DNA of 64,000 nt from positions 2,914,001 through 2,978,000 of the forward strand of contig JANJGN010000052.1 of the NCBI GenBank assembly GCA_026770705.1, read 5' to 3'. The position numbers were made by a program, and so were the translations under genes. This document shows positions 10,331 through 56,100 of the stretch, one piece after another; within the stretch, counting starts at the first letter, position 1; the number at the start of each line of letters is the position of its first letter. The stretch comes from Isurus oxyrinchus (lineage: Eukaryota). The notes under the pieces were generated by a model. It saw nothing but the letters and a program-made list of their open reading frames with translations. It was not told the origin of the DNA and searched no databases.

Positions 10331-10363
10331 TATATTAAAATCAAGTTAAATCTTCAGACTTAC

Positions 10364-12278: not shown

Positions 12279-12337
12279 CTGTGTGTGTGTGTGCGTGTGT
12301 GTGTGTGTGAGTGATGTTGGAGTTTGCAGTAACTCAC

Positions 12338-12618
12338 GTTCCACAGTGATGGTTATGAACCCCTCCACTGCTCCATGTTCATTCTCTGCCACACACTGAT
12401 AGTCTCCAGTGTCCCTGGATGTAACGTGAGGAATCACCAACCACAGCTCATTGTTGGAACTTGTTCTGTTCATTGGGACATTAAGATGTCGCCACATCAG
12501 GTTAGAAGCTGGGAAGCTCTCGACAGAGCAGATTATCACTGCAGAATTCCCCTCAATTATATTGATCGATGAAGCGTTAATCATATCAAGAGAATTAACT
12601 AAGAGATTCTGGGTGCGT
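12338..12618 (-). pseudogene. Gene C C2/I-set exon, middle copy, 1-nt frameshift
   Basis: 281 nt; CCACAG has become CCCAG, giving an in-phase TAG at 12599-12601. Both splice sites are intact. Confidence 0.8.
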
Positions 12619-13368
12619 CTAAAAGAAATAAAGATTTTAATGTGAGCAAGCATAGTGCACAGCAAGACTCCATGCATCATTTCTCTGTATCTGATGTTGG
12701 AATGCTTTTCCAGGTACCTTCCCTCATGAAAAATTACTGTCATATTTATAATGGTCACTTCCTATGTAAACTGTCACACTGCAGTTGCTTCCTCCCACCA
12801 GTAGAGTTGCTAACCCTCTAGAATGAAAGAAACATCCTTTAACACTCTCAAGATGTCCCCAAGGGCTTGATAGGCAATGAATTGTATTTGATCGATGGAG
12901 CACTGAGGGCTAAATCTACATTTCTCTGTTCAGGAGGTTGCTCATCCAATTCAGGGTCTTGCTGATCTGGAGTTTACCTTCCTTCAGCACAGAATGGGAG
13001 CTGATACCATGACTCCAGTGCAGCACTGAGAGAGGAGAGGGAGCTCACACTTGTGTGTGTACTTCTGCACGTGAGTTTGTATTTGTGTGTATGCGCGTGT
13101 CTGTCAGCACATGTGTGGACGCGTGTGTGTGTGTGTGTGTGTGTCTGTGTGTGTATGTCTGTATGTCTGTGCTTGAGGGAGTGTGTGTGCATGTGTGTGT
13201 CTTTGTGTGCGCATGAATGTTTGTATGTGTGAGTTGAGTTTGTGTGTGTTTCTGTGTATGTGTTTGAACGTATGTTTGTGTGTAAGTGTGCATGTTTGTG
13301 TCTACACATGAGTGTTTTTGCATGTGTGAGTGTGTGTGTGAGAGATGTTGAAGTCTGTGTACACTCAC

Positions 13369-13650
13369 ATTCCACAGTGATGGTGATGAATCCCTCCACT
13401 GCTCCATGTTCATTCTCTACCACACACTGATAGTCTCCAGTGTCCCTGGATGTAACGTGAGGAATCACCAACCACAGCTCATTGTTGGAACTTGTTCTGT
13501 TCATTGGGACATTAAGATGTCGCCACGTCAGGTTAGAAGCTGGGAAGCTCTCGACAGAGCAGATTATCACTGCAGAATTCCCCTCAATTATATTGATCGA
13601 TGAAGCATTAATCATTTCAAGCGAAGTAAATGTGAGATTCTGTGGAGCAT
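13369..13650 (-). CDS. Gene C C2/I-set exon, first tandem copy in transcription order (intact)
   Basis: 282 nt, ttcttag|...|gtgagt, phase 1-1, APQNLTFTSLEMINASS..TITVE. Confidence 0.88.
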
Positions 13651-14353
13651 CTAAGAACAAATCAAGTGTTTAATGTGAGCAAGCAGCGTGCACAGCAAGA
13701 CTCCATGCATCATCTCTCTGTATCTGATGTCTGTATGCATTTCCAGATACCTTCCCTCCATATAACTTCCACTGTCAAATTTATAATGGGCACTGCCTAT
13801 GTAAACAGTCAAACTACAGTTACATTCTCCCACCAGTAGAGGTGCTGTTCACCTAGAATGAAAGAAACTTTCACATCCTCAGGATTTTGCCAAGGGATTT
13901 ACTGGAATGAATTGTATTTGATCGATGGAGCACTGAGGGGTAAATCTACAATTCTCTGTTCAGGAGGTTGCTCATCCAGTTCAGGGTCTTGTTGATCTGG
14001 AGTTTACCTTCCTTCAACACAGAATCGGAGCTGACACCGAGACTCCAGTGCAGCCCTGAGAGAGGAGAGGGACCTCGCGCGTGTTTATGTGTATGTGTTT
14101 GTGTTTCTACATATGTGAGTATGTTTGTGTGAGTATGCATGCATGTGTCTGTGTGTGCATGTGTGTATGTGTTTGCGCAAATGTGCGTGTGTCTTTGTGT
14201 ATATTTCTGTGCATAAGTGAACGTGTGTACATGTGTATGTGTATGTGTGTGCACGTGTGAGTGTGTGTGTGTGAGTTGAGTGTGTGTATGTTTCTGTGTA
14301 GGTTTTTGCACGTGTATGACTGTGTGTAAATGTGCATGTATGTGCCTACACAT

Positions 14354-16225: not shown

Positions 16226-17540
16226 TAATATTGGACTAATCTCCAGGCGAGGTTGGCTGGATGGATTATTGACAAGGTCCATTCACCCTGTAAAGAGTTT
16301 CTCTGGTTTGAAATACCCAATCAAACATCGAGTTCTGTGTCTAAACCTTGTGTTGAAAAGACACCTTTCCAGCTCTTCACCTGCCATTAGCTTGTTGAGT
16401 CTTCACACGCTCCGTCTGTCCGTGACCAACCCCTCTTAGCTCATCCTTTCCTTGTCGTACATCGAGCTGTTCATCCTGATGGGTTCCATCCTTCCCAGTA
16501 ACACTCCATCTCCGACATCAAACTAACTCCCAACACGTTGATGAATTGTATGGATTCCAGCGTCAGTTGGTTCTGTCTGAGGCTGTTTCTCTGATCGGGG
16601 ACCGAGCTGTTCTGAATAGACATTGTGTTCAGCAGTTCTAATTGCAGATCAGACTGTTCAACCAATGCTGCTGTTCACTGAGGTGACTCCGATTCTACAT
16701 TCACACATTAATGATCTCATGTCCAGCAGCAAACATCTGAATGAAGCCAGGTTCAAGAAAAATCCCAGCTGCTTGATCCGACAGTTATCTGTTCAGGCAT
16801 GGCCCCTTGTTCCAAATAACAAACATTATTTAAAAATAGTCATCACATGAGCCTGGTTAACAAGGAAATGAAACCATGAACAATTTGCAGTGAAGTGAAA
16901 CGTACAGGACTAATCTATTTATATTGAGCTGATGATATAGAATGTTACACGAGGCATGTTGCTAATTTCAAACATCATCTGAATTACGACAGTTCTGACA
17001 GTGCAGCACTCCCTCAGTACTGACCCTCCGACAGTGCAGCACTCCCTCAGTACTGACCCTCTGACAGTGCAGCACTCCCTCAGTACTGACCCTCCGACAG
17101 TGCAGCACTCCCTCAGTACTGACCCTCTGACAGTGCAGCACTCCCTCACTACTGACCCTCTGACAGCGCAGCACTACCTCAGTACTGACCCTCTGACAGT
17201 GCAGCACTCCCTCAGTACTGACCCTCTGACAGTGCAGCACACCCTCAGTACTCCCTTACTGGGGAGAATCTGCCTGGGTTTTGAGCAGAAATCATGAGCA
17301 CGTCTTAAAACCACAACCTTCCGTATTAAAGAGAGTGTGTCTGAGAGAGAGAGAGAGCGAGAGAGACAGAGAGAGTCTGTGAGAGAGAAAAAGAATTAGA
17401 NNNNNNNNNNNNNNNNNNNNNNNNNNNNNNNNNNNNNNNNNNNNNNNNNNNNNNNNNNNNNNNNNNNNNNNNNNNNNNNNNNNNNNNNNNNNNNNNNNNN
17501 NNNNNNNNNNNNNNNNNNNNNNNNNNNNNNNNNNNNNNNN

Positions 17541-19574: not shown

Positions 19575-20035
19575 GGGGTAACATCCCCTCAGCATCCACC
19601 CTGTCAAACCCCCCACCACCTCAGAATCTTATATGTTTCAATAAGATCACCTCTCATTCTTCTAAACTCCAATGGATACAGGGCCCAACCTGCTCAACAT
19701 TTCCTCACAGGACAAGTCCCCTTCATCCCAGGAATCAGCCCAGTGAACCTCCTCTGAACTGCCTCCAATGCAGAGTCTATCCCTCCCTAAGTAAGGAGAC
19801 CAGAACTGTACACACTGCTCCTGATACAATCTCACCAACGCCCTGTACAGTTGTAGCAAGACTCCCCTCCTTTTATACTCCATCCCTTTGCAATAAAGGC
19901 CAACATTCCACTTGCCTTCCTCATTCCGTGCTGTTCCTGAATGCTGACTTTCTGTGATTCATGTACAAGGACACACAGATCCCTCTGTACCGCATTCTGT
20001 AGACTCTCTCCATTGAAGTAATATTCTGCTTTTTG
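19575..20035 (-). mobile_element. CR1 LINE fragment
   Basis: MEYK..LLQLYRALVR..CVQFWSPYL. Confidence 0.85.
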
Positions 20036-20066
20036 ATGTCCAGTCCCCTCCCTTGTTGCCTTTCAG

Positions 20067-20353
20067 GAGTGACGTCAGAGGGATGGTCTATGAAGGCGCT
20101 GCCTCGGAGGGCCATCAGCAGCTCTTGTGTGGTTATTCCGTGTAGCTTTGACTTTCCTTCCCACTCTTACACAGCACTGCACGGAGCTTGGTATAAATAT
20201 TGGTATAGATGGAAATATACCATCACATACACCAAAGATCCCAATTATGGGATGGCCACATTCGTGGGACGTGCTAAAATAATCGGCGACTTGGAAGGGA
20301 AGAATTGTTCAGTGAGGATTGACAGTCTCAGAGCTGAAGACAGTGACGTGTAT
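20067..20353 (+). pseudogene. Gene D Siglec/MAG-like V-set exon truncated in the F strand
   Basis: Acceptor tttcag, phase 1; W..SSCVVIPCSFDFP..HGAWY..GRAKIIGDLEGKNCSVRIDSLRAEDSDVY, then retrotransposon sequence and a stop. Confidence 0.85.
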
Positions 20354-21485
20354 TGCACCCAATTCTAAATCTTTTCACCAATTAGTCGACCTCATGAAGA
20401 TGTGTTTTCAGCTGAAGCCGTGGGTAATAATGCAGAGGTTTAAGTTTAACTCCAGAGTAAGGGCCCAGGGAGAGTCCATCGCAACCTATACAGTGAAGTG
20501 GAAGCAGGTGACTGAACACTGGGACCTCGGAGACACACTCAATGACATGTTGCGGGGCCGATTGGTTTGTGTCGTTCACCCCAACGCCATTCAGAGCCGT
20601 TTACTCGCAGAAGCCGACATCGATTTGAAGCGCACCATGGAAATAGCGCCAGGCATGGAAAGTGCTGGGAGAGACTGGCGGGATCTACAGGAATATGCAA
20701 CATGGCGCCAGTCCTCAGCTGGGACAGGAACCAACCACCGGGCGTGAGGCTCAAACTGGAGAGAGAGAGAGAGAGAGGGAGAGAGAGAGAGAGACAGCCG
20801 CCAAGCGAGAGACAGTCTCTGCCGCTCCAGAAACTAAAAGCCTTCGTGGGAGTATTTCAGCAGCAACTCCGAAGTTGGCCTGTTCTCGATGTGGGGGGGA
20901 GTGAGCTCGTACCGGACACCTGCAGGTTCAAGGGGGCAGAATGCCATCACTGCCACAAGAAAGGGGCGGGTAATAAAGCAATGCAGGGTGAAATCGAGAC
21001 AGCCCATCAGGCAGTGCACCAACATGATGGAAGTGAATAATATCACAGAGCCTGAAGCTGCTGATACCGATGTCTATTCCCTGTCCAATGTCACAGTGGT
21101 AAAAACTGAACCTATAACCATCACAACCCAAGTGAATGGGCAGCCACTAGTAATGGGGCAGATACGGGAGCCTCAGACACAGTGGTGGAAGAGCCCACAT
21201 TTAAACAGCTAAATGAAGGAACCCAGACGCTGAATTTAGAGCCAACAATGGATCAGCTGAAGACACACACTGGAGAATCCATACAGGGAAAGGACCTCAT
21301 CCCAGTACCTGTGTCCTACAGGCAGCAGACAGCCCAGCTTCCAGTGATCATAGCGACAGGTGAGGGCCCTAGTCTTCTGGGCCGAGACTGGTTCCAGAAA
21401 ACCAAGCTCAGCTGCTCTGAAATGTTTCACTGGAGGAGTTGCTGAGTTGCTGGGGGAATATGAGAGTGTATCTCGGAATGAGTTT
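20354..21485 (+). mobile_element. Ty3/Gypsy LTR retrotransposon internal fragment (gag, zinc knuckle, protease), decayed
   Basis: QRFKFNSRVRAQGESIATY..LNDMLRGRLVC (gag), CRFKGAECHHCHKKG (knuckle), VNGQPL..DTGA and SLLGRDW (aspartic protease), with frameshifts. Confidence 0.85.
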
Positions 21486-21739
21486 GAAGAATTGAAGCAT
21501 CCTCACAGGCTGCAAGTGTCCCTCAGGTCAGAGTTGGTTCCACTGGAAAATCCTGAAGAGAAAGAAAGCGAATTCTGTGCCGCTCTGAGCAAACTGAAGA
21601 AACAGTTGGCAGGGAAGACCCAACCATGTCCAATGTTCCAGGAGGAAGGCAAGAGATACAAGGAAGAGACTGAAGAGCTGAAGATTCAGCTGAATGAAAC
21701 CAAAGAGGCAGTTACAGTATCACAACAAGTTTACAGTGC

Positions 21740-22020
21740 AGAAGGAGGCCATTCAGCCCCTTGAGCCTGTTACACAGGAACAGGAGGAGGCCATTCAGCC
21801 CCCTCAAGCCTGTTACACAGGAACAGGAGGAGGCCATTCAGTCCCCTCGAGCCTGTTACACAGGAACAGGAAGAGGCCCATTCAGCCCCCTCAAGACTGT
21901 TACACAGAAACAGGAGGAGGCCATTCTGCCACTTATGTCCGTTACACAGGAACAAGAGGAGGCCATTCTGCCACTTATGTCCGTTATACAGGAACAGGAG
22001 GAGGCCATTCAGCCCCTTGT
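21740..22020 (+). repeat. About 41-bp minisatellite (GAGCCTGTTACACAGGAACAGGAGGAGGCCATTCAGCCCCTC)
   Basis: About 7 units. Confidence 0.9.
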
Positions 22021-31890: not shown

Positions 31891-33384
31891 CACAGAGCTA
31901 GATAGATTCTTGATTAACAATGGGGTGAAAGGTCATTGGGGGTAGGCAGGAATGTGAGGTTGAGGTGACAATCAGATCAGCCATGATCTTACTGAATGGC
32001 GGAGCAGGTTCGAGGGACTGAGTGACCTTCTCCTGATCCTAACTCAGATATCCATATGTTCTCAAAGGCAAATGGGGATGGGCAACAAATACTGGCCTAG
32101 TCAGCGACACCAACATCCCTGAAATGAATAAGAAAAAAATGTATCAATCAATTAAATTTATTGATTAATCGAATTGAAATTCCTCCAGCTGCCGTGGTGG
32201 GATTTGAACCCGTACCTCCAAAGCATTCACCTGGGCCTCTGGATCACTGGCCTAGTGCCATTCCCATTGTGCGACTGTCTGCTATCATCATGGCTCTTTC
32301 ACATCGATGTGGAAGTCCTGATAACAGAAGCATTGGACGAGGTACAGAAAGGTGTCAGATCAGGAGCTCCATTGCTCAATATGAACGGATAATAAAGATA
32401 AATGAACATAAACCTTCCAGTCGCTAATTAGGGAGTCACTGTGGAGCCCATGAGTCCCTCGCAGCGCTATTGCAACCTTCTGGATCCCCAGTAGGGGACT
32501 CGGGGTGCAGCTGTGTCTTCCTCATCATTTGGAAAAGCCGGAATTGTTCGGGTGCCCCTTCAAACAGGCCAAAGATGCAGTGGGTGATGTCTCCCACAGG
32601 CCCTGGGAGACCTCCCCTGCCAATTTGTTTTGTAGCTTATTCTTCAACTGCGACATTGGATCAGCTTGAAAAAGGGTGAGGCTGAGGCAATACCACCAGG
32701 TAAGCGTCTATCCCCTCCCACTTCACCCCCCCCACCCCCGTAACCATCACAGTCCCTCCCATCGTGCTGGAGGAGCATAATGTGCACATTCCCCTCCTTC
32801 CAATCAGTCTCCTCCCTTCCTCTCTAATCCTTGATCTTATTGTGTTCGGGGTTGACATCCCAGTCCTCCTCCCTAGACTGTCTGATGTTGACATCCCAAT
32901 GCCCCATGTAGACCTGACCTCTCTCCAACTAGAGGCCCATTGTACTGTGACTTACAGAGACCACCGGCCCCCCTCGATTCCCACCCCCACCCCTACCCTC
33001 TATATTACCTGCTCCCCACTGACAGGCTGCAGATGCCTCCCCTGACTGGGATTGTGCCACCTGCGGCCTAGTATCAAGCCACCCACCCCCAGGACCGACG
33101 TGTGTGAGCGACTGACCACGTCCTGCACACCATGCTGGGCACCACCAACCCAGGACTGCCAGGCTGTCCCCACCACACTGGACTGGGACTAGAATAGGCG
33201 TGCCAAGCACAGCTCTCTAAATCGTGGCGCAGACCCACAGCACTCGCAATGTTTTGTGGCCCGAATCCTTGCTGAGGAACTGGCCAGCACTAAAAGCAAA
33301 AAAACTGCAGATGCTGGAAATCCAAAACAGAAACAGAAACAGAAATACCTGGAAAAACTCAGCAGGTCTGGCAGCATCGGCTCT

Positions 33385-33709
33385 ATCTCTTACAATCTAT
33401 CGCAGCATGAAAAAGGTGCAGCATTCAGAAAGCACATTCCAATCAGAGAACAGAGTTTAGCAACGTCACATTTCTGTTCATTCCTATTTGACCATGTTGG
33501 CTGCACACAGCCAGACAATGCCGTGGTTATTATGTGTCCACACAGCAGGACTGGGGAGCACCAGGTATAAGGAGAAGTTTCAGCTTGCTGAGGAGAAGAA
33601 GGACAATCTCTCGTTCCAGGATTCTCTCCGTACATTAAGAAGCAGGCATGCCGATGTTTCATTGCACTCTGTCTGCTGATGGGAGTCCGCTTGGAAATTG
33701 CTGTTTGTG
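33385..33709 (-). other. Probable 3'-UTR exon of gene B
   Basis: Acceptor ctttccatcag; 33385-33510 is homologous to the gene C 3' UTR at about 7770-7900. Confidence 0.6.
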
Positions 33710-34340: not shown

Positions 34341-34448
34341 GATACGAAGGTGATTCTAACCAGGACACTGACCAGTTTCATTACACTTAACCCAACATCA
34401 CACGTTATTTGTCCGCACTGACTGACCAGATTGTTGCTGTACAAAGCT

Positions 34449-34588
34449 TCAAACAGTCTGTCGACTTCCTTTCACTGTTTGTCTCTCCCAGACACAGACT
34501 CCAGCGATAGTGATAACCACAGCCACAAGGAATATCACAGCTCGTATTCCCAGGATCAGGATCACGTGCAGAATCTCTCCTCCACTGT
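34449..34588 (-). CDS. Activating-type TM exon SGGEILHVILILGIRAVIFLVAVVITIAGVCVWERQTVKGSRQTV* (gene B)
   Basis: Acceptor gttctctag, phase 1, long hydrophobic run with one Arg (CGA 34542-34544), 12-residue tail, TGA at 34449-34451, probable donor gtcagt after 34427. Confidence 0.82.
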
Positions 34589-34984
34589 CTAGAGAACACA
34601 CAGAAAGAAATCATCACTGACTCTCCGCTTTCAATCTCTCACTCTGGCTGAACAATCAAGCTTCATATCACTGCAACATTTGCTGTAATATTGACCCATC
34701 CACTGGGATTCAATGTGGAATGAATGTTTTCATTGTAAACACTCTAAGAGTGGACAATCGGAACTTTCCCCTTAGCGTGGAACATTGGTGAGAATGGATC
34801 ATTGTGCTGTTGGACTCCCAGTCCAATGTTTCTCTCCATCACTGTGTACAGGATTGTGCTGTAGAAAATTCTGGAAACGTTTAGTGCAGGGTTGAAATCC
34901 ATCTCGGACGTGTGTGCGAATCGGGCAGGATCGAGATGGACTCCCCCACGGACTTACACCCCCCGCTTAATAAACAGTTCCAAT

Positions 34985-36251: not shown

Positions 36252-36404
36252 ATTCCACAGTAATGGTTATGAACCCCTCCACTGCTCCATGTTCATTCTC
36301 TGCCACACACTGATAGTCGCCAGTGTCCCTGGATGTAACGTGAGGAATCACCAACCACAGCTCATTGTTGGAACTTGTTCTGTTCATTGGGACATTAAGA
36401 TGTC
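36252..36404 (-). pseudogene. Gene B 3' half of the domain-3 C2 exon; 5' half and whole domain-2 exon missing
   Basis: Matches the other domain-3 copies from RHLNVPMNRT to TITVE with a GTGAGT donor; homology stops abruptly at about 36404. Confidence 0.88.
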
Positions 36405-36927
36405 AGGGAGGGAATCAAGAACCCCGTATGCACAATTACCAACAGAAAGTGAACAACAATTTATACTTAATGGGAAGACAGTGCTGATTGGTTGGCAAGT
36501 GGTCTCTGATAGGTGGAGGTGTTGCCGTGGAGAATGGTGTGTGCGAGATGTAAAGTTTAGACAGCTTGTCTCTTCATTCAGCAATAATCAAATAAAGATC
36601 AATTAACTTCTATCGACTGTGAAGCATTTTGAGAGGCATGAGAATGTGGACACTGAGAACGGGCTGCACTGTCAGAGGGTCAGCGCTGAGGGAGTGCTGA
36701 TGTAGAATGAAAGATGTCGGTACAGTTAATGCTTTTCATCATTGATATTAAAGTGATTTTTAGAGGTTGCTTTAGGACTGAACTGGAAGCTATCACCAGG
36801 TTATTGAGAATCAGACAGTGTGTTATAATAAGCTGTGTTTTGTGTTATTATGTAAACGTCACAGTTTGTGTTATTTCCCATTGAGTGTTGGATGTGAATT
36901 GTTGAGTAATTATAACACAGCACTTAC

Positions 36928-37301
36928 CAGAAACGTCAAGCTGGGTTACAGGATACTAGCTGTAACTATTCCTGCTGTCAAACTCTATTCTGAAAAAATA
37001 AGGTCCTGCATCTTCCCGTCTGATGTTGTTTATAATCAGGGAACAGTCGCCATCTTTCAGGTCTCCAGACAGCCGGGTCCGATGGCGGAATCTTTGATCC
37101 CTGTGACTGTGACCCTCGGAGTGAAAGGCTATAGACCATTTAGGCTGTGGGTTCCCATCTATTCCTTTCAACCAGATTCCGCACGTGATCTCCCTACGAA
37201 ATTTGATAAGTAACTGGAATGACATGGAATCGGTACACATGAACCTTCCTGTGCTGTCACCTCTCGTGGAGTGTCACCTTTCCACTCTTGTGACAGTCCA
37301 A
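36928..37301 (-). pseudogene. Gene B Siglec V-set exon, disrupted
   Basis: 374 nt (not a multiple of 3). Frameshift near 37180-37195 splits GSCVPIPC from GDCSL..YFFRIEF, and there is a TAG stop at 36956-36958. Splice sites are intact. Confidence 0.9.
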
Positions 37302-38004
37302 CTGGGGAGAGAAATATCAACATTTGACTCTGGATAGTTTGTAGATCCACTAGACTCGATATCCACCCCCTCCATCACTGGGGCACAGTGGCTGCAGTGT
37401 GGACCATCTACAGGACACACAAGGAACTCCCCAAGGTTTCACAAAGGATGGAACAGAATCCTGGACACAGGAGTGGACAATTTCATTCTACATTGGCTCA
37501 TGGTCCTCAGGACCCTGTTTAGTGAAGCCAGTCTTCCACCCAACACAGTGTCCACAAGATACACAGGGAAACTGTGTAAATATCTCATCTCTCAACACTG
37601 AATGGGCTGAGCTTCAGTTTAACTTTCAGTATTGTTAAATTTCCTTATTGTGGTTGCTATGGTGAAACTGTGCAGGAAGTGTGAGGGCTGGACTCTCTGT
37701 CTATTCTCACTGCAGCTGTGATGTGGTCGTGGTGATTCTCAGTAAAATGAAACCCTCTGAGCTCCTCCATCCCCGAGGTTTAGGGAGTGAATTCCAGAGC
37801 TCAGGCCCCAGGCAGCTGAAGGCACGGCCACCAGTATTGGAGTGATGGGAATTGGGGGATGGTCAAGAGGCCGGAATTGGAGTAACACAGAGATCTGGGA
37901 AGTTGTTTGGGTGAGTTGCAGGAGGTTACAGAGATAAAGAGATAAGAATGATCTTTTACAAAGACTGTTAAACATAAATCTGTCCAAGCTGACGATGATA
38001 TTAC

Positions 38005-38083
38005 CTTGGAGAAGTGACAAGAGGAAGTAGACTTCCCGATCATTGTCCACTCCCAGATATTCCATCCACTTCTCACTCTCAAG
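38005..38083 (-). pseudogene. Gene B leader exon with a 1-nt deletion relative to gene A
   Basis: ATG at 38043 to donor is 39 nt, versus 40 nt in gene A. An upstream ATG at 38065 gives in-phase MEYLGVDNDREVYFLLSLLQ. Confidence 0.8.
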
Positions 38084-43120: not shown

Positions 43121-43735
43121 GTGACGTGATTCCTGTGTAAAGCTGAGCAGTCGTTGAGCGAGTTTCAATTCACTGCTCAATCCAGCTGTTGAGCTGGATC
43201 TTCTGAAGGAGCAGATGTTGCTCAGCGCTCCTTAAAAATGTGAGAGACTGAACAACGTGTAGGAGAATGAGAGAGAGAATGAGAAGGAGAGCATTAGTGG
43301 AGATAAGAGAGAGAGTGAATGAGAGAGAGAATGAGAAGGAGAGCATTAGTGGAGATTGGAGAGAGAGGGAATGAGAGAAAAAATGAGAAGGCGTGCATTA
43401 GTGGAGATAAGAGAGAGAGTGAATGAAACATGGAAAAAGGAAAGAGATTGCATTCACTAACAAAAGAAACGTTTTCATTTATATAGCTCCTTTCACATCC
43501 TCAGTAGGTCACAAGGTATCTTATGGTCCAGGTCAACACTGCCTGTTACAGGACTGAGTTGTGAAACAGTGAGTGTTGGATGAGATGTTAAACAGTAGGT
43601 GAAAATCAAAACTCTTCAGGGGCTGTGAAGGGTTCTGGGTTGTGAAAGGTGCTATAGAAATGCAAGTTCTTTCTATAAGGAGAGAAGTTTGAAGAAAACA
43701 TTTTCAAAAACAACCAATTAAACCTTCACACTTAC

Positions 43736-43832
43736 TTTCTCACACACTTGAAGATGAAGAATCCACTCAGTCCAACACTCAAACAGATTCCAGCTCCAAG
43801 CAATCCTGCTTTCCATTCATTGGAATCTCGCC
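43736..43832 (-). CDS. Gene A transmembrane exon RDSNEWKAGLLGAGICLSVGLSGFFIFKCVRK
   Basis: 97 nt, ttttacag|...|gtaagt, phase 1-2. Same length as, and homologous to, the TM exon at 10364-10460. Confidence 0.88.
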
Positions 43833-44049: not shown

Positions 44050-45060
44050 CACAGGACTACATACACACCAAACAGCGGAAACAACATGCTATAGACAGAG
44101 CAAAGCGATCCCACAACCAACGGGTCAGATCTAAGCTCTGCAGTCCTGCCACATCCAGTCATGAATGGTGATGGACAATTAAAGATCTAACAGGAGGAGG
44201 ATGTTCCACAAATATCCCCATCCTTAATGATGGGGGAGCTCAGCACATCAGTGCAAACGACAAGGCTGAAGCATTGGCAACCATGTTCAGCCAGAAGTGC
44301 TGAGTGGATGCTCCATCTCGGCCTCCTCCAGAGGGTCCCAGCATCACAGATGTCAGCTTTCAGACAATTCGATTGACTCCACGTGACATCAGCAATCAGC
44401 TGATGATACTGGATACAGCAAAGGCTATTGGCCCTGGCAACAACCCAGCAACAGGAAATAATGTGGCTACAACTGCGGGTAAGAGGCTGGGAACTCTGCG
44501 GTGAGTAACTCACCTCCTGACCCCCCAAAGCCTGTCCACCATCGACAAGGCACAAGTCAGGAGTGTGATGGAATAATCTCCAATTGCTTGAATAAGTGCA
44601 GCTCCAACAACACTCAAGAAGCTCGACACCATCCAGGAGCAGCTTGTTTGATCGACAGCCCATCCACCAGCATAAACATTCATACCCTCCACCACTGGCA
44701 CACAATGGCAGCAGTGTGTGCACCATCTACAAGATGCACTGCAGCAACTCACCAAGGCTCCTTCAACAGCACCTTCCAAACTCTTAACCTCTTCCACCAA
44801 GACAGTTCCAAGTCAGTGAGGTGTGTGATTTGGAAGCGAACTTGAGGTGGTGGTCTGCCCTGGGACTTGGAAATATATTGGCCGTTCTTTCACCATCACT
44901 GGGACAAAATCCTGGAACTCCCACCCTAACAGCACTGTGGGTGTACCTACACCACAGGGAATGTAGTGGTTAAAGAAGGCAGCTCACCACCACCTTCTCA
45001 AGGGGCAGTTACAGATGGGCAATAATTTCTGGTCTTGTCAACAATGCCCACATCCCATGA
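44050..45060 (+). mobile_element. Internally deleted LINE of the 29920-31890 family, with 3' end
   Basis: Nucleotide similarity to 29930-30200 and 31680-31860, and to the reverse complement of 5700-6100. Confidence 0.8.
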
Positions 45061-45098
45061 GCTAACAACAAGAGAACGTTCAATTCTGTGTAACTCAT

Positions 45099-45380
45099 GT
45101 TCCACAGTGATGGTTATGAACCCCTCCACTGCTCCATGTTCATTCTCTGCCACACACTGATAGTCTCCAGTGTCCCTGGATGTAAGGTGAGGAATCACCA
45201 ACCACAGCTCATTGTTGGAACTTGTTCTGTTCATTGGGACATTAAGATGTCGCCACGTCAGGTTAGAAGCTGGGAAGCTCTCGACAGAGCAGATTATCAC
45301 TGCAGAATTCCCCTCAATTATATTGATCGATGAAGCGTTAATCATATCAAGAGAATTAATTGAGAGATTCTGTGGTGTGT
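45099..45380 (-). CDS. Gene A domain-3 C2/I-set Ig exon with mutated splice donor
   Basis: 282 nt open frame (IICSVESFPASNLTW..DTGDYQCVAENEHG). Acceptor ttttcag is intact, but the donor reads ATGAGT where paralogous copies read GTGAGT. Confidence 0.8.
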
Positions 45381-46203
45381 CTGAAAACAAATAAAGATCA
45401 TTACTTACATTGACTGTGAAACGCTTTGAGAGACACTGAGAATGTGAAAGGTGTGATATCAATGTAGGTTCCTTCACCACAAAGCACTTAATTCAGGCAG
45501 ACACTTCAGTTCAGTACTGAGGGAGTGCTGTATTGTTGGAGAGTCAGTACTGATGGAGTGCTGCACTGTTGGAGGGTCAGTACTGAGGTAGTGCTGCACT
45601 GTGGGAGGGTCAGTACTGAGGGAGAGCTGCCCTCTTGGCGCGTGAGTACTGATGACCTGCTGCACTGTTGGAGGGCAGGTACTGTGAAAGCTGCACTGCC
45701 GCATAGTCAGTACTGAGCAAGTACTTCACTGTCAGAGAATCAGTACTGAGGGAGTGCTGAACTGTTGGAGGATCAGTACTGAGGGAGTGCTGCACTGTTG
45801 GAGGATCAGGACTGAGGGAGTGGTGCACTGTCAGAGGGTCAGTACTGAGGGAGTGCTGCACTGTTGGAGGGTCAGTACTGAGGGAGTGCTGCACTGTTGG
45901 AGGGTCAGTACTAGGGGAGTGTTGCACTGTTGGAGGGCCAGTACTGGAAGAGTGCTGCACTCTCGGAGGGTCAGTACTTAGGGAATGCTGCACTGTCGGA
46001 GGGTCAGTACTGAGGGAGTGCTGCACTGTCGGAGGGTCAGTAATTAGGGAGCTCTGCACTGTTGGAGGGTCAGTACTGAGGGAGTGCTGCACTGTTGGAG
46101 GGTCAATACTTAGGGAATGCTGCACTGCCAGAGGGTCAGTACTGAGGGAGTGCTGCACTGTTGGAGGGTCAGTAATTAGGGAGATCTGCACTGTCGGAGG
46201 GTG

Positions 46204-47090
46204 ATAAGACCATAAGACCACAGGACGTCAGAGCAGAAGGAGGCCATTCGGCCAATCAACTCTGCTCCACCATTCAATGACACCATGGCTGATCTGACAA
46301 TCCTCAACTCCACTTTCCTGCCTCTTCCCCATAGCCTTTGATTCCCTGACTGATTAAAAAACTGTGTATCTCAGCCTTGAATATAATTAATGACCCAGAC
46401 TCTGCAGCTCTCTGTAGTAAATAATTCCACACATTCACTACCCTCTGAGGGAAGAAACTCCTCATCTCTATCTTAAATGGGTGACCCCTTACTCTGAGAT
46501 TATGCCCTCTGGTCCTAGACTCTCCCACAAGGGGAAACAACCTCTCAGCATCTACCCTGTCAAGCACCCTAAGAATCTTATATGTTTCAATAAGGTCAGC
46601 TCTCATTCTCCTAAACTCCAATGAGTACAGGCCCATCCTACTCAACATCTCCTCATATGAAAATCCCTCCATTACTGGGATCAACCTAGTGAACCTTCTC
46701 TGGACTGCCTCCAATGCCAGTACATCTTTCCTTAGATAAGGGAACCAAAACTGCTCACAGTATTCTAGGTGTGGTCTAACTAGTGCCTTGTATAGTTTTA
46801 GCAAGGCTTCCCTATTTTTATACTCCATTCCCTTTGAAATAAAGGTCAGCATTCCAAATACTATGTGCATTTAAGTAAAGAGCCATTAATTTTGTCTTTT
46901 TATCATTTCCCCCCCTCTGACACTATTTGCTGATGTATTTTTATGTTTGGACACTGTGTCCCTTCCTGTCACACACTGGGTATCATTGCCAAAAAGCTAT
47001 CCTGCAATGCTGACAAATCCTTTTGGTTTGTAACTGTACATATACCCTCTCCAGAAACATTCGCCCCACACTCTATTTAGTTTAAAGCCA
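46204..47090 (-). mobile_element. Internally deleted copy of the same CR1
   Basis: 3' part joined to the endonuclease start at ttcca (about 46852). Confidence 0.9.
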
Positions 47091-48400: not shown

Positions 48401-49019
48401 ATAGTGAGGTAGTGCAGCACTGTCAAAGGGTCAGTACTGAGGGAGTGCTGCATGTGGGAGGGTCAGTACTGAGGGAGTGCTGCACTGTGGGAGGGACAGT
48501 ACTGAGTGAGTGCTGCATGTGGGAGGGTCAGTACTGAGGGAGTGCTGCACTGTGGGAGGGTCAGTACTGAGTGAGTGCTGCATGTGGGAGGGTCAGTACT
48601 GAGGGAATGCTGCATGTGGGAGGGTCAGTACTGAGGGAGTGCTGCACTGTGGGAGGGTCAGTACTGAGGGAGTGCTGCATGTGGGAGGGTCAGTACTGAG
48701 GGAGTGCTGCACTGTTGGAGGGTCAGTACTAGGGGAGTGTTGCACTGCTGGAGGGCCAGTACTGGAAGAGTGCTGCACTCTCGGAGGGTCAGTACTTAGG
48801 GAATGCTGCACTGTCGGAGGGTCAGTACTGAGGGAGTGCTGCATTGTCGGAGGGTCAGTAATTAGGGAGCTCTGCACTGTTGGAGGGTCAGTACTGAGGG
48901 AGTGCTGCACTGTTGGAGGGTCAATACTTAGGGAATGCTGCACTGCCAGAGGGTCAGTACTGAGGGAGTGCTGCACTGTTGGAGGGTCAGTAATTAGGGA
49001 GATCTGCACTGTCGGAGGG

Positions 49020-52000
49020 TGATAAGACCATAAGACCACAGGACGTCAGAGCAGAAGGAGGCCATTCGGCCAATCAACTCTGCTCCGCCATTCAATGACA
49101 CCATGGCTGATCTGACAATCCTCAACTCCACTTTCCTGCCTCTTCCCCATAGCCTTTGATTCCCTGACTGATTAAAAAACTGTGTATCTCAGCCTTGAAT
49201 ATAATTAATGACCCAGCCTCTGCAGCTCTCTGCAGTAAAGAATTCCACACATTCACTACCCTCTGAGAGAAGAAACTCCTCATCTCTGTCTTAAATGGGT
49301 GACCCCTTACTCTGAGATTATGCCCTCTGGTCCTAGACTCTCCCACAAGGGGAAACAACCTCTCAGCATCTACCCTGTCAAGCACCCTAAGAATCTTATA
49401 TGTTTCAGTAAGGTCAGCTCTCATTCTCGTAAACTCCAATGAGTACAGGCCCATCCTACTCAACATCTCCTCATATGAAAATCCCTCATTTCTGGGATCT
49501 ACCTAGTGAACCTTCTCTGGACTGCCTCCAATGCCAGTACATCTTTCCTTAGATAAGGGAACCAAAACTGCTCACAGTATTCTAGGTGTGGTCTAACTAG
49601 TGCCTTGTAAAGTTTTAGCAAGGCTTCCCTATTTTTATACTCCATTCCCTTTGAAATAAAGGCCAACATTCCACCTGCCTTCCCTATTAACTGTTGAACT
49701 TGTATGTTATCTTTCTGATGACCCCCAAATTCCTCTATGCTTCACCTTTCCAATGTCTTTCTCCATTGAAATAATATTCAGCTCCTCTATACATCCTGCC
49801 ACAGTGCAGCAGCTCACATTTTCCCACATTATATTCCATCTGCCAAGTTGATGTCCACTCACTGAACCTGTCTATGTCCCTCTGTAGACTCTTTGTGTCA
49901 CCCTCACCACTTGCCTTCCCATCTATTTTTGTGTCATCCACAAACTTGGCGATAGTACATTAATTTCCCTCATCCAAGTCATTAATTATATTTTGTAAAT
50001 AATTGTGGCCCCAGCACTGATCCCTGTGGCACTCCACAGGTTGCCATCTTGAAAATGCCCCCCTTATCCCAACTCTCTGACTTCTATTAGTTCGCCGATC
50101 CTCTATCCATGCTAATATACTGCCCCCAACACCATGGGCTCTTATCTTATTAAGTAGCCTTATATGTGGTACTTTACTGAACAACTTTTGGAAATCCAAA
50201 TATATTACATCTACTGGTTCCCCTTTATCTATCCTGTTTGTTACCTCCTCAAAGAATTCTAATAAATTTGTCATGCATGATTTCACCTTCATGAAGCCTG
50301 TGTGTGATTAAATTATGCATTTCTAAATAGTCTGCTATTACATCCTTTATAATGGACTCTAACATGTTCCCAATGACAGATGTTAAGCTAACTGGCCTAT
50401 AGTTACCTGTTTGTTGTCTCCCTCCCTTTTTGAATATGGGTGTTACATTGGCAGTTTTCCAATCCTCTGGGAGTTTCCCAGAATCTAAGGATTCTTGGAA
50501 GATTAAAACCAGTACATCCACTATCTCTGCATCTACTTCCTTTAATATCCTAAGATGCAACCTATCAGGTCCAGGGGACCTATCAGCCTTGAGACCCATT
50601 AATTTCGCTAGCGTTATTCTCTAGTGATAGTTACTGTATTTATTTCCTCTCCCCACCCCCCTTTTGCCCCTTGATTATTTAGTATTTTTGGAATGATATT
50701 AGTGTGTTCTACCGTGAAGACTGATGCAAAGTATTTATTCAACTCCTCTGTCATTTCCTGGTTCCTCATTATTATTTCCCCAGCCTAGTTCTCTAAGGGG
50801 CCCATGTTCACTTTGGTCTCTCTCTCCCTTTTTATATATTTAAAGAAGCTTTTATTGTCCTTTTTTATATCAATTACTAGTTTACCTAGTTTTCTCCCTC
50901 TTTATTTATTTTTTGGTCATCTTCTGTTGGTTTTTAAATCTCTCTCAATCCTCTGGCTTACCACTAATCTTTGTCGTGTTGCATGTTTTTTCTTTCAATT
51001 TGACACACACCTTAACTTCTTTGGGTAACCCAGGTTGGTTTATTCTCTTCCTACAATCCTTCTTCCTCACTGGGATATATCTTTGTTGTGAGTCATGAGC
51101 TATTTTCTTTAACATCTGCTTTTGTTCATCCAGCATCTTTTCTGCTAAACCCCTTTCCCAGTCCACTCCAGACAACCCTGTCCTTATTCCTTTGTAATTA
51201 CACTTATTTAAGTCCAGCACAGTTGTTTCCGACCCAGGTTTCTCAGTCTCAAACGGAATGCTAAATTCTACCATGTTATGGTCACTGTTTTCCAGGGGAT
51301 CATTTATTCTGAGATCATGTATGAAACCTGCCTCATTACACATTACCAGATCCAAAATAGCCTGATCCCTGGTTAGATCCACGACATATTATTCCAGGAA
51401 ACTGTCTTGAATACACTCTATGAATTCTTGCTCATGGCTACCTCTGCCAATTGGGTTTTCCCAATCTACATGAAGATTAATGTACTGCCTTTTTTACATG
51501 CCCTCATTATCTCATGATTTATTCTCTGTCCTACAGCCGAGCTACAGTCATGGGGCTGATAGACCACTCCCACCAGTTCCTTGTTCCCCTTGTTATTCAT
51601 TACCTCGAGCCATATGGATTCTATACCCTCCGATCCAAGATCATTTCTTGCTTTCGTACTTATTCCATCTCCTATTAACAAAGCTACCCCACCACCTTTC
51701 CTTCCTGCCTGTCTTTTTGAAAAGTCACATACCCCTGAATATTTATTTCAAAGCTTTGATCTCCTTGTAACCATGTCTCCATAATGGCTATAAGATCAAA
51801 CCCATTAACCTCTATTTGTACCTTTAATTCATTTATGTTGTTCCAAATACTATGTGCATTTAAGTCAACAGCCATTAATTTTGTCTTTTTATCATTTTCC
51901 TCCCTCTGACACTATTTGCTGATGTATTTTAATGTTTGGACACTGTGTACCCACCTGTCACACACTGGGTATCATCACCAAAACAGCTATCCTGCAATGC

Positions 52001-52075: not shown

Positions 52076-53162
52076 ATACTGAGGGAGAGCAGCACTGTCA
52101 AAGGGTCATTACTGAGGGAGTGTTGCACAGTTGGAAGCTCTGGAACAAGGGACTGCAGCATTATCTGAGGGTCAGTCGGGAGGGAGGTATTCAATGTTGG
52201 ATTGCAAGTTCTGAGGGAGCGCTGCAGAGTTGGAGGTTCAGTAGTGAAGGAGTGCTGCACTGTCAGAGGGTCAGTACTGAGGGAGTGCTACACTGTCAGA
52301 GGGTCAGTACTGAGGGAGTGCTGCACTGTTGGAGGGTCAGTACTGTGGGAGTGCTGCAGTGACGGAGGATCAGTACGGAGAGATTTCTAAACTGTTGGAG
52401 GATCAGTACTGAGGGAGTGCTGCACTGTCAGAGGGTCAGTACTGAGGGAGTGCTGCACTGTCAGAGGGTCAGTACTGAGGGAGTGCTGCACTGTCAGAGG
52501 CTCAGTACTGAGAGAGTGTTGCACTATCAGAGGGACAGGACTGAGGGAGTGCTGCACTGTCAGAGGGACAGGACTGAGGGAGTGCTGCACTGTTAGAGGG
52601 TCAGTACTGAGGGAGTGCTGCACTGTCAGAGGGTCAGTACTGAGGGAGTGCTGCACTGTCGAAGGGTCAGTTCTGAGGGAGTGCTGCACTGTCAGAGGGT
52701 CAGTACTGAGGGAGTGCTGCACTGTCGCAGGGTCATTATTGAGGGAGTGCTGCGATGTCGGAGGATCAGTACTGAGGGAGTGCTGCACGATCAGGGGGTA
52801 AGTACTGAGGGAGTGCTACACTGTTGGAGGTTCAGTACTGAGTGAGTGCTGCACTGTTGGAGGGTCAGTACTAAGGGAGTGCTGCACTGTCAGAGGGTCA
52901 GTACTGAAGGAGTGCTGCACTGTCGGACAGTCAGTACTGAGGGAGTGCTGCACTGTCAGAGGATCAGAACTGAGGGAGTGCTGCACTGTCAGAGAGTCAG
53001 TACTGAGGCAGTGCTGCACTGTCAGAGGGTCAGTATTGAGGGAGTGCTGCACTGTTGGAGGGTCAATACTTAGGGAATGCTGCACTGCCAGAGGGTCAGT
53101 ACTGAGGGAGTTCTGCACTGTTGGAGGGTCAGTAATTAGGGAGATCTGCACTGTCGGAGGGT

Positions 53163-56100
53163 GATAAGACCATAAGACCACAGGACGTCAGAGCAGAAGG
53201 AGGCCATTCGGCCAATCAACTCTGCTCCGCCATTCAATGACACCATGGCTGATCTGACAATCCTCAACTCCACTTTCCTGCCTCTTCCCCATAGCCTTTG
53301 ATTCCCTGACTGATTAAAAAACTGTGTATCTCAGCCTTGAATATAATTAATGACCCAGCCTCTGCAGCTCTCTGTAGTAAATAATTCCACACATTCACTA
53401 CCCTCTGAGAGAAGAAACTCCTCATCTCTGTCTTAAATGGGTGACCCCTTACTCTGAGATTATGCCCTCTGGTCCTAGACTCTCCCACAAGGGGAAACAA
53501 CCTCTCAGCATCTACCCTGTCAAGCGCCCTAAGAATCTTATATGTTTCAATAAGGTCAGCTCTCATTCTCCTAAACTCCAATGAGTACAGGCCCATCCTA
53601 CTCAACCTCTCCTCATATGAAAATCCCTCCATTACTGGGATCAACCTAGTGAACCTTCTCTGGACTGCCTCCAATGCCAGTACATCTTTCCTTAGATAAG
53701 GGAACCAAAACTGCTCACAGTATTCTAGGTGTGGTCTAACTAGTGCCTTGTATAGTTTTAGCAAGGCTTCCCTATTTTTATACTCCATTCCTTTTGAAAT
53801 AAAGGCCAACATTCCACCTGCCTTCCCTATTAACTGTTGAACTTGTATGTTATCTTTCTGATGACCCCCAAATTCCTCTATGCTTCACCTTTCCAATGTC
53901 TTTCTCCATTGAAATAATATTCAGCTCCTCTATACATCCTGCCACAGTGCAGCAGCTCACATTTTCCCACATTATATTCCATCTGCCAAGTTGATGCCCA
54001 CTCACTGAACCTGTCTATGTCTCTCTGTAGACTCTTTGTGACACCCTCACCACTTGCCTTCCCATCTATTTTTGTGTCATCCACAAACTTGGCGAAAGTA
54101 CATTAATTTCCCTCATCCAAGTCATTAATTATATTTTGTAAATAATTGTGGCCCCAGCACTGATCCCTGTGGCACTCCACAGGTTGCCATCTTGAAAATG
54201 CCCCCCTTATCCCAACTCTCTGACTTCTATTAGTTAGCCGATCCTCTATCCATGCTAATATACTGCCCCCAACACCATGGGCTCTTATCTTATTAAGTAG
54301 CCTTATATGTGGTACTTTACTGAACAACTTTTGGAAATCCAAATATATTACATCTACTGGTTCCCCTTTATCTATCCTGTTTGTTACCTCCTCAAAGAAT
54401 TCTAATAAATTTGTCATGCATGATTTCACCTTCATGAAGCCTGTGTGTGATTAAATTATGCATTTCTAAATAGTCTGCTATTACATCCTTTATAATGGAC
54501 TCTAACATGTTCCCAATGACAGATGTTAAGCTAACTGGCCTATAGTTACCTGTTTGTTGTCTCCCTCCCTTTTTGAATATGGGTGTTACATTGGCAGTTT
54601 TCCAATCCTCTGGGAGTTTCCCAGAATCTAAGGATTCTTGGAAGATTAAAACCAGTACATCCACTATCTCTGCATCTACTTCCTTTAATATCCTAAGATG
54701 CAACCTATCAGGTCCAGGGGACCTATCAGCCTTGAGACCCATTAATTTCGCTAGCATTATTCTCTAGTGATAGTTACTGTATTTATTTCCTCTCCCCACC
54801 CCCCTTTTGCCCCTTGATTATTTAGTATTTTTGGAATGATATTAGTGTGTTCTACCGTGAAGACTGATGCAAAGTATTTATTCAACTCCTCTGTCATTTC
54901 CTGGTTCCTCATTATTATTTCCCCAGCCTAGTTCTCTAAGGGGCCCATGTTCACTTTGGTCTCTCTCTCCCTTTTTATATATTTAAAGAAGCTTTTATTG
55001 TCCTTTTTTATATCAATTACTAGTTTACCTAGTTTTCTCCCTCTTTATTTATTTTTTGGTCATCTTCTGTTGGTTTTTAAATCTCTCTCAATCCTCTGGC
55101 TTACCACTAATCTTTGTCGTGTTGCATGTTTTTTCTTTCAATTTGACACACACCTTAACTTCTTTGGGTAACCCAGGTTGGTTTATTCTCTTCCTACAAT
55201 CCTTCTTCCTCACTGGGATATATCTTTGTTGTGAGTCATGAGCTATTTTCTTTAACATCTGCTTTGTTCATCCAGCATCTTTTCTGCTAAACCCCTTTCC
55301 CAGTCCACTCCAGACAACCCTGTCCTTATTCCTTTGTCATTACACTTATTTAAGTCCAGCACAGTTGTTTCCGACCCAGGTTTCTCAGTCTCAAACGGAA
55401 TGCTAAATTCTACCATGTTATGGTCACTGTTTTCCAGGGGATCATTTATTCTGAGATCATGTATGAAACCTGCCTCATTACACATTACCAGATCCAAAAT
55501 AGCCTGATCCCTGGTTAGATCCACGACATATTATTCCAGGAAACTGTCTTGAATACACTCTATGAATTCTTGCTCATGGCTACCTCTGCCAATTGGGTTT
55601 TCCCAATCTACATGAAGATTAATGTACTGCCTTTTTTACATGCCCTCATTATCTCATGATTTATTCTCTGTCCTACAGCCGAGCTACAGTCATGGGGCTG
55701 ATAGACCACTCCCACCAGTTCCTTGTTCCCCTTGTTATTCATTACCTCGAGCCATATGGATTCTATACCCTCCGATCCAAGATCATTTCTTGCTTTCATA
55801 CTTATTCCGTCTCCTATTAACAAAGCTACCCCACCACCTTTCCTTCCTGCCTGTCTTTTTGAAAAGTCACATACCCCTGAATATTTATTTCAAAGCTTTG
55901 ATCTCCTTGTAACCATGTCTCCATAATGGCTATAAGATCAAACACATTAACCTCTATTTGTGCCATTAATTCATTTATTTTGTTCCAAATACTATGTGCA
56001 TTTAAGCCAAGAGCCATTAATTTTGTATTTTTATCATTTTCCTCCCTCTGACACTATTTGCTGATGTATTTTAATGTTTGGAAACTGTGTACCCACCTGT

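What the first reader, a model, noticed from the sequence alone, without database searches (positions are those of the whole stretch)
34427..34588. Hidden activating TM exon uses an N-proximal Arg (FcR-gamma style)
Seen: phase-1 exon ILHVILILGI-R-AVIFLVAVVITIAGVCVW-ERQTVKGSRQTV*, intact although the gene B ectodomain is broken. It is unrelated in sequence to the two 97-nt TM exons. The stop is about 22 nt before the next junction, so it should escape NMD under the 50-nt rule. Established: an Arg in the outer part of the TM recruits FcR-gamma or CD3-zeta in LILRA, FcalphaRI, GPVI and NKp46; activating mammalian Siglecs couple through a basic TM residue to DAP12. Inference: an ITAM-adaptor-coupled shark Siglec module, possibly acquired by exon shuffling.
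Basis: partly seen in the sequence, partly recalled or inferred. Interest (0 to 1): 0.82.

Follow-up and report, generated by a model that had tools for sequence, protein, structure and literature searches.

The report
Shark arginine membrane-anchor exon, relic copy
This is a real copy of a conserved shark exon that gives Siglec-like and other immune receptors a membrane anchor with a buried arginine and almost no tail (the usual build of an "activating" receptor), but here it sits behind a broken gene and is most likely a leftover.

Summary
Observation confirmed. On the minus strand, 34427-34588 is a phase-1 exon with a strong acceptor and a GT donor. It encodes a 29-residue hydrophobic span with one Arg, a 12-residue tyrosine-free tail and a stop 22 nt before the donor.

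It is not a chance ORF. The same exon closes at least 16 automatic gene models in 9 shark species. Its 30-residue core is identical to a great white shark "CD33-like" model, and the motif ILGIRA is invariant.

Transcript-like contigs join an Ig exon to exactly 34588 and break at 34427. They differ from the window by 2-10%, so they show that the family is spliced, not this copy.

Gene B is decayed: its V exon has a frameshift and a stop, it has no C2 exon, and half of its Ig exon is replaced. This copy is most likely a pseudogene relic.

"FcR-gamma style" is only half supported. Arg in a type I chain fits the mammalian rule. Its position (7-8 of a 19-23-residue helix) is not N-proximal, and no adaptor could be tested.

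The scan has already reported this exon type many times elsewhere in this genome. Ordinary; low interest.

The parts
34427..34588 (-). Arg-TM cassette exon. It holds a phase-1 start, stalk SGGE, a TM helix with the ILGIRA motif, the 12-residue tail ERQTVKGSRQTV, the stop at 34451-34449, and 22 nt of 3' UTR before the donor.
   Evidence: sequence, frame, hydrophobicity. (homologues; 30/30 core identity to great white P0021). (contig boundaries at 34427 and 34588/34590).
34589..34612 (-). Splice acceptor: the pyrimidine tract TTTCTTTCTGTGTGTTCTCT followed by AG (34590-34589).
   Evidence: The X7 contig joins 36253 + G directly to 34588.
34421..34426 (-). Donor-like GTCAGT after the exon. It appears to be used in some transcripts of relatives and read through in others.
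   Evidence: context. X5 record 12 and X6 record 20 stop fitting at 34427, while X7 record 29 and X5 record 11 run through it. No AATAAA or ATTAAA lies within 2.3 kb downstream.
36252..36404 (-). Remnant (3' half) of gene B's Ig exon, HLNVPMNRTSSNNELWLVIPHVTSRDTGDYQCVAENEHGAVEGFITITVE, with a GTGAGT donor. The 5' half is replaced by unrelated sequence at 36405-36585.
36928..37301 (-). Gene B V-set exon, broken by a 1-nt deletion, a 6-nt insertion and a TAG stop. It still carries the Siglec motif GPYFFRIE.
38005..38065 (-). Gene B leader exon (MEYLGVDNDREVYFLLSLLQ, phase 1).
   Evidence: ORF 37739-38065. The joint 37301>38005 with GT..AG on the minus strand appears in X6 and X7 contigs.
34558..34905 (-). 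Intron just upstream of the cassette (the aligned range runs 31 nt into the exon). It is conserved with a cloudy catshark locus, so the cassette seems to have been copied with its flank.
   Evidence: residues 600-698 of the mis-modelled protein P0014 align here at 48% identity.

Best explanation
The stretch is a genuine copy of a conserved shark 'arginine membrane cassette'. This is a phase-1 last coding exon that supplies a short stalk, a TM helix with an invariant ILGIRA motif and a 5-12-residue tail without tyrosine. In intact relatives it closes Siglec-like (V-C2, V-V-C2, V-V-Ig-Ig), CD22-like, sialoadhesin-like and SLAM-like ectodomains.

By analogy with all well-studied receptors of this build, the buried Arg most likely pairs with the aspartate pair of a dimeric ITAM adaptor. 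That pairing would be needed for surface expression and signalling (inferred, not shown). In this window the cassette follows a decayed gene: leader intact, V exon frameshifted and stopped, C2 exon absent, Ig exon half replaced. This copy is therefore most likely a pseudogene relic that can make no working receptor, even if it is still transcribed.
For: - Exon anatomy.
- Homologues ending in this exon, by phmmer: E = 7e-14 to 4e-4.
- Names and species: RefSeq/GenBank models of Scyliorhinus torazame, S. canicula, Chiloscyllium punctatum, C. plagiosum, Hemiscyllium ocellatum, Rhincodon typus, Mustelus asterias and Carcharodon carcharias.
- The Arg and the motif ILGIRA are invariant in 16 sequences. 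The core is 30/30 identical to great white P0021 and 29/30 to P0018/P0019.
- Tails are 5-12 residues long without an ITIM.
- Ectodomain families differ (Pfam). For CD22-like versus Siglec-like models the TM is the only significant similarity; for SLAM-like versus Siglec-like it is by far the best conserved part.
- The V-set of the neighbouring gene matches solved Siglec-5, MAG, Siglec-7, Siglec-8 and CD33 structures with the YFFR arginine aligned.
- Splicing of relatives: X7 record 29 joins the Ig exon end to 34588. The X5 and X6 exon contigs have depth 183-231 against 2.6-7 for the flanking intron.
- Decay of gene B.
- Rule that a basic TM residue pairs with the adaptor's aspartates: PMC1440944.
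Against: - No adaptor binding, surface dependence or signalling was tested, for this copy or for any shark relative.
- All runs were Logan contigs whose RNA nature is only guessed. They were laid at 90% likeness and differ from the window by 2-10%, so they may come from paralogues or a sister species.
- Contigs of the closest organism (X1) cover the whole region, intron included, so transcription of this copy is neither shown nor excluded.
- The exon and both splice sites are intact, so use by another transcript cannot be ruled out.
- A 2014 survey found no FcR-gamma in sharks (PMC4016189). An unchecked note of this scan (s1-863553) says the gene is present in this genome.
Confidence: 0.78

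Rival explanations
1. The exon is still in use here. It may serve as an alternative last coding exon for a neighbouring intact gene (for example read-through from gene A at 58439-40900), or for a gene B transcript that skips the broken exons. Either would yield an activating or tail-less isoform.
For: - The exon, acceptor and donor are intact.
- An X7 contig carries the same odd sequence upstream of the truncated Ig exon (36405-36510) spliced to 34588. A locus with this very arrangement is therefore transcribed and spliced in a close relative.
- X1 contigs at about 99% identity cover all 30 bins of the region.
Against: - Gene A has its own TM exon (43735-43824) and tail exons further downstream (note s1-868789).
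- Gene B's leader and broken V exon lie between gene A and the cassette.
- A transcript that starts in the Ig remnant has stops upstream in frame.
- No joint from an intact exon to 34588 was listed.
Confidence: 0.12
2. The cassette does not couple to an adaptor. The buried Arg would instead serve ER retention, regulated surface display, homo-oligomerisation or a signalling-dead decoy role.
For: No adaptor was tested. The Arg position (7-8 of about 21) fits neither the mammalian FcR-gamma class (position 3) nor the DAP12 Lys class (position 9) cleanly.
Against: - ILGIRA is invariant across four ectodomain families and three shark orders.
- The same clusters hold ITIM-tailed paralogues.
- This build is general for adaptor-coupled receptors (PMC1440944).
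Confidence: 0.08
3. It is a chance hydrophobic ORF in repeat-rich intergenic DNA.
For: The window is full of repeats and low-complexity ORFs.
Against: Identity to annotated shark exons is 80-96%. The splice sites and phase are correct. Contig boundaries fall exactly at the exon ends.
Confidence: 0.01

Closest known systems
[quoted passage not shown]
   Same: They use the same last coding exon. The core is 30/30 (P0021) or 29/30 identical. Over the 46 aligned residues identity is 96% for P0018/P0019 and 91% for P0021. P0018/P0019 carry the same 12-residue tail apart from one residue, and P0021's tail differs more. The ectodomain family is the same V-set plus C2-set.
   Different: Those models have open V and C2 exons. 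In the window the gene is broken and has no C2 exon. They are automatic predictions without experiments.
Mammalian activating Siglecs (Siglec-14, -15, -16, mouse Siglec-H) that pair with DAP12/DAP10
   Same: They have a Siglec-type V-set with the YFFR arginine in the family, a basic TM residue and a short tail without ITIM. They lie beside ITIM-bearing paralogues, as in paired receptors (PMC4042635, PMC7226832).
   Different: The TM exon shows no sequence relation, and the PDB sequence search with it was blank. Siglec-15 uses Lys. The shark expansion is independent. Bony fish are reported to lack CD33-related Siglecs (PMC7226832). The shark adaptor is unknown.
FcR-gamma-coupled type I receptors with a TM arginine (FcalphaRI as measured in PMC1440944; NKp46, LILRA and GPVI from general knowledge)
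   Same: Arg rather than Lys in a type I chain, lying on the N-terminal side of the helix centre, with a very short tail.
   Different: In FcalphaRI the Arg is at TM position 3. Here ten hydrophobic residues precede it, which puts it at position 7-8 of the best helix. The flanking residues show no similarity.
Other copies of this exon reported by this scan in the same genome (s1-300793, s1-868598, s1-871670, s1-871938, s1-864012 and others)
   Same: The exon type and the reading are the same. Several of those copies also sit in damaged genes.
   Different: They lie at other loci. I could not see their sequences.

Membership tests
Shark Arg-TM cassette exon (last coding exon of annotated shark Siglec-like, CD22-like and SLAM-like models) | Sequence homology across the exon, including the invariant ILGIRA motif | tested here: met
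   phmmer E down to 7e-14. 96% identity to P0018/P0019 over 46 residues. Alignment and identity matrix.
Shark Arg-TM cassette exon (last coding exon of annotated shark Siglec-like, CD22-like and SLAM-like models) | Phase-1 acceptor that follows an Ig-type exon, with the stop inside the exon after a short tail | tested here: met
   The relatives' models end at the same place. A contig joins an Ig exon end to 34588.
Shark Arg-TM cassette exon (last coding exon of annotated shark Siglec-like, CD22-like and SLAM-like models) | Belongs to an open, expressible receptor gene | tested here: not met
   Gene B has a V exon with a frameshift and a stop, no C2 exon, and an Ig exon half replaced.
Siglec family (for the gene cluster that the exon belongs to) | N-terminal V-set domain related to solved Siglec V-sets, with the essential arginine in the YFFR motif | tested here: met
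   Gene A's V exon matches Siglec-5, MAG, Siglec-7, Siglec-8 and CD33 chains at E = 5e-14 to 1e-10, with GPYFFRKE aligned to GSYFFRVE. The gene B remnant keeps GPYFFRIE.
Siglec family (for the gene cluster that the exon belongs to) | Binding of sialic acid | not testable with these tools
   Needs a glycan array or binding assay with an intact paralogue.
Adaptor-coupled activating immunoreceptors (basic TM residue paired with an Asp pair of an ITAM or YxxM adaptor dimer) | One basic residue inside the TM helix of a type I chain | tested here: met
   A single Arg at residue 7-8 of the best 19-23-residue hydrophobic window. It is invariant in 16 sequences.
Adaptor-coupled activating immunoreceptors (basic TM residue paired with an Asp pair of an ITAM or YxxM adaptor dimer) | Short cytoplasmic tail without signalling motifs | tested here: met
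   The 12-residue tail ERQTVKGSRQTV has no Tyr. Relatives have tails of 5-12 residues and no ITIM.
Adaptor-coupled activating immunoreceptors (basic TM residue paired with an Asp pair of an ITAM or YxxM adaptor dimer) | Arg-dependent physical association with an adaptor, and adaptor-dependent surface expression | not testable with these tools
That a shark FcR-gamma gene exists rests on an unchecked scan note (s1-863553), against a negative 2014 survey (PMC4016189).
   The residue is Arg, which fits. Its position is 7-8 of 19-23, or 11th of the 29-residue hydrophobic run and 18 residues before the cytoplasmic W-E-R. That lies between the FcR-gamma and DAP12 classes of PMC1440944.

The most novel reading that the evidence does not exclude
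At the level of the family, not of this copy: galeomorph sharks have a single portable Arg-TM exon. It has been placed behind at least four kinds of Ig ectodomain (Siglec-like, CD22-like, sialoadhesin-like, SLAM-like). For three of them it evolves in concert within each shark order rather than with its host gene: orectolobiform Siglec-like, CD22-like and Sn-like cassettes share 26-28 of 30 residues and the lineage mark IRAG. This points to exon exchange or gene conversion around one shared adaptor. It would mean that paired activating and inhibitory Siglec-type receptors arose in cartilaginous fish independently of the mammalian CD33-related Siglecs.
Probability: 0.4. Interest if true: 0.55.

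Novelty: new member of a known kind. Interest (0 to 1): 0.22.

Why it matters
For this locus, little: it is one more decayed copy in a fast-turning immune gene cluster.

For the family, there are two points. First, bony fish are reported to lack CD33-related Siglecs (PMC7226832), yet sharks and rays carry large clusters of Siglec-type receptors in both ITIM-tailed and Arg-anchored forms. These exist only in automatic annotation, and I found no paper that describes them. Second, one anchor exon shared among unrelated ectodomains would be a clear case of exon shuffling that builds activating receptors. It would also give a direct handle for asking which ITAM adaptor cartilaginous fish use.

Tried and rejected
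I could not fetch the genomic loci of the shark homologues, so there is no DNA-level comparison of donor, intron or 3' exon, no dN/dS and no synteny.
- The PDB sequence search with the exon peptide was blank at E <= 10.
- Region-restricted word searches with the cassette of P0001 and P0002 added only three models. The whole-protein search with P0013 was far more useful.
- Exon peptides were searched by reference only.
- Read laying gave only contigs at 90% likeness. It could not tell this copy from paralogues, nor show strand, ends or expression level.
- Paper searches for shark Siglecs, or for shark DAP12, FcR-gamma or CD247, found nothing specific.
- Chance ORF was rejected.
- A transposon-borne exon is not supported. 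The stretch has no other copy in the window and no high-copy depth, unlike 33285-33481.

Full report
**What is there**

Reading the minus strand, a pyrimidine tract ends in AG at 34590-34589. The exon begins at 34588 with two bases that complete a split codon (phase 1, as in Ig-superfamily genes). It then reads SGGEILHVILILGIRAVIFLVAVVITIAGVCVWERQTVKGSRQTV, with stop TGA at 34451-34449.

The hydrophobic run is 29 residues long and contains one Arg. The best 19-, 21- and 23-residue windows score 2.86-2.95 on the Kyte-Doolittle scale and put the Arg at position 7-8. Only 8 of 62,476 138-nt windows on this strand are both open and this hydrophobic. An open frame alone is common, at 19% of windows.

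The exon has no second copy in the window. It is unrelated to the two conventional TM exons at about 10363-10479 and 43735-43824, which resemble the ITIM-tailed great white models.

**It is a known exon type**

A full HMMER pass over 1.84 billion representative proteins returned ten hits. Nine are shark receptor models and eight of them carry this exon at the C-terminus (E = 7e-14 to 4e-4). The sources name them as follows:
- CD33-like and Siglec-12 in Scyliorhinus torazame
- Siglec-13 and CD22-like in Chiloscyllium punctatum
- CD22-like in Hemiscyllium ocellatum
- sialoadhesin-like in Rhincodon typus
- a hypothetical Ig protein in S. torazame
- SLAMF9-like in Mustelus asterias

Further searches added two S. 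canicula models, another S. torazame model and three great white shark models.

The window's 30-residue core is identical to great white 'CD33-like' P0021 and 29/30 identical to 'Siglec-12' P0018/P0019. P0018/P0019 also share the tail apart from one residue: 44 of 46 residues match. The window therefore comes from a lamniform shark or a close relative.

In all 16 sequences ILGIRA is invariant. The tails are 5-12 residues long and hold no ITIM.

**Shared between receptor families**

Pfam shows different ectodomains:
- V-set plus C2-set (Siglec-like)
- four to eight Ig_2/I-set repeats (CD22-like)
- a single CD22-type V-set
- an Ig_3 domain (SLAM-like)

Between CD22-like P0005 and Siglec-like P0021 the only significant similarity is the cassette, at 77% over 39 residues. 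SLAM-like P0007 aligns with P0021 at 26% identity overall, and the cassette is by far the best conserved part of that alignment.

The cassette groups by shark order rather than by host family. Orectolobiform Siglec-like, CD22-like and sialoadhesin-like cassettes share 26-28 of 30 residues and a common IRAG variant. Catshark and lamniform Siglec cassettes form their own groups. The two SLAM-like cassettes stand apart, at 14-20 of 30.

The intron just upstream of the exon also matches a stretch wrongly included in a cloudy catshark model, so the exon seems to travel with its flank.

A stingray model (P0094) has a different Arg-bearing TM with a similar R-G-V-L-F-L stretch and an 11-residue tail. 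It may be a batoid counterpart.

**The cluster is Siglec-type**

The V exon of the neighbouring gene A matches solved Siglec-5, MAG, Siglec-7, Siglec-8, CD33, Siglec-10 and sialoadhesin chains (E = 5e-14 to 1e-10). Its GPYFFRKE aligns with the GSYFFRVE stretch of Siglec-5, which from general knowledge holds the sialic-acid-binding arginine. The gene B remnant keeps GPYFFRIE.

**Splicing**

All four runs laid were Logan contigs whose RNA nature is only guessed. They were laid at 90% likeness.
- One contig (X7 record 29) joins 36510-36253, one letter G, and 34588-34180. That is the Ig exon end spliced exactly to the predicted acceptor. It then reads through the stop and the proposed donor.
- Two other runs have contigs that fit only 34427-34590. 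One has 19 and 56 unmatched letters at its ends. Their depth is 183 and 231, against 2.6-7 for contigs of the flanking intron.
- Read-through contigs are weaker, at depth 34 and 8.6.
- A leader-to-V joint (37301>38005, GT..AG on the minus strand) and a V-to-V joint also appear.

The exon borders are therefore real for the family, and a junction at 34427 is likely. No polyadenylation signal lies within 2.3 kb downstream, which fits a further 3' exon. However, these contigs differ from the window by 2-10%. They show that relatives are spliced, not that this copy is.

The X7 contig also carries the odd sequence that replaces the Ig exon's 5' half. A locus with this same damaged arrangement is therefore transcribed in a close relative.

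**This copy**

Gene B has these parts:
- an intact leader at 38005-38065
- a V exon at 36928-37301 with a 1-nt deletion, a 6-nt insertion and a TAT>TAG stop relative to gene A
- no C2 exon
- an Ig exon whose first 133 nt are replaced by 181 nt of unrelated sequence with in-frame stops

An intact 46-codon exon behind such a gene is expected by chance in a young pseudogene. I read this copy as a relic.

**Mechanism and adaptor**

From established work, receptors with one basic TM residue and a short tail assemble with dimeric adaptors through the adaptor's aspartate pair. In mammals, FcR-gamma partners carry an Arg in the N-terminal TM segment (position 3 in FcalphaRI). Type I DAP12 partners carry a Lys near the centre (position 9). 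Both points are from PMC1440944.

Here the residue is Arg, which fits FcR-gamma. It lies at position 7-8 of the best helix, with ten hydrophobic residues before it and 18 residues before the cytoplasmic W-E-R. The class cannot be read from the sequence.

A 2014 survey found no FcR-gamma in sharks (PMC4016189). Notes of this scan report an FcR-gamma gene in this genome (s1-863553, s1-869613), which I could not check.

Coupling to an adaptor is an inference for the family. It is moot for this copy.

**Known or new**

Activating Siglecs that pair with DAP12 are well known in mammals (PMC4042635, PMC7226832). Bony fish are reported to lack CD33-related Siglecs (PMC7226832). I found no paper on shark Siglec-type receptors of this build. 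RefSeq models already contain the exon, and this scan has reported the same exon type many times elsewhere in this genome, including dead copies.

**Limits of the work**

**Verdict**

This is an ordinary relic copy of an already annotated exon family, of low interest. The modest family-level point is the shared cassette.

Noticed in passing
window 20033-20368 (+): A V-set exon lies on the opposite strand (…SSSCVVIPCSFDFPSHSYTALHGAWYKYW…). It is 30-36% identical to the shark Siglec-like V-sets. Retroelement-like ORFs follow directly at 20319-21764, including a CCHC-type stretch. It may be another, diverged Siglec or CD22-type gene or fragment.
   Followed up: partly
window 11269-11572, 12329-12635, 13347-13666 (-): Three tandem copies of the same Ig exon, 93-97% identical in DNA to gene A's Ig exon at 45049-45384. 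They lie upstream of the conventional TM exon at 10363-10479, which suggests exon-level tandem duplication in the downstream gene.
   Followed up: partly
P0010 (C. plagiosum 'Siglec-11') and P0014 (S. torazame 'pIgR-like'): These public automatic models look chimeric. In P0010 the Arg cassette is internal and runs straight into a C2 exon of another gene. P0014 includes translated intron that matches window 34558-34905.
   Followed up: partly
P0094 (Hypanus sabinus 'Siglec-10', 292 aa): This stingray Siglec-like model has a different Arg-containing TM (LISLAVRGVLFLLATVAVIW) and an 11-residue tail. It shares R-[AG]-V-[IL]-F-L with the shark cassette and may be a batoid counterpart.
   Followed up: no
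window 62209-63910, 52387-53181, 45610-46221, 48593-49039, 16968-17297, 60747-61271 and others: Many arrays of a 33-nt minisatellite read in frame as STDPLTVQHSL. They often lie next to reverse-transcriptase fragments and make up a large part of the window.
   Followed up: no
window 49960-51770 and 54103-55912: Two near-identical copies of a LINE-like block (reverse transcriptase and endonuclease ORFs) lie about 4.1 kb apart, together with their flanking ORFs. This looks like a recent local duplication.
   Followed up: no
window 33285-33481: Contig depth is extremely high in all four runs (38,000 to 377,000). The stretch is a very high-copy or highly expressed repeat about 1 kb downstream of the exon.
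   Followed up: no
window 36928-37301, contig joint in run X1: A contig of the closest organism joins the V exon's end back to the V exon's start (37300>36928, with one letter between). This fits transcripts of paralogues with two V exons in tandem, as in great white P0018/P0019.
   Followed up: no
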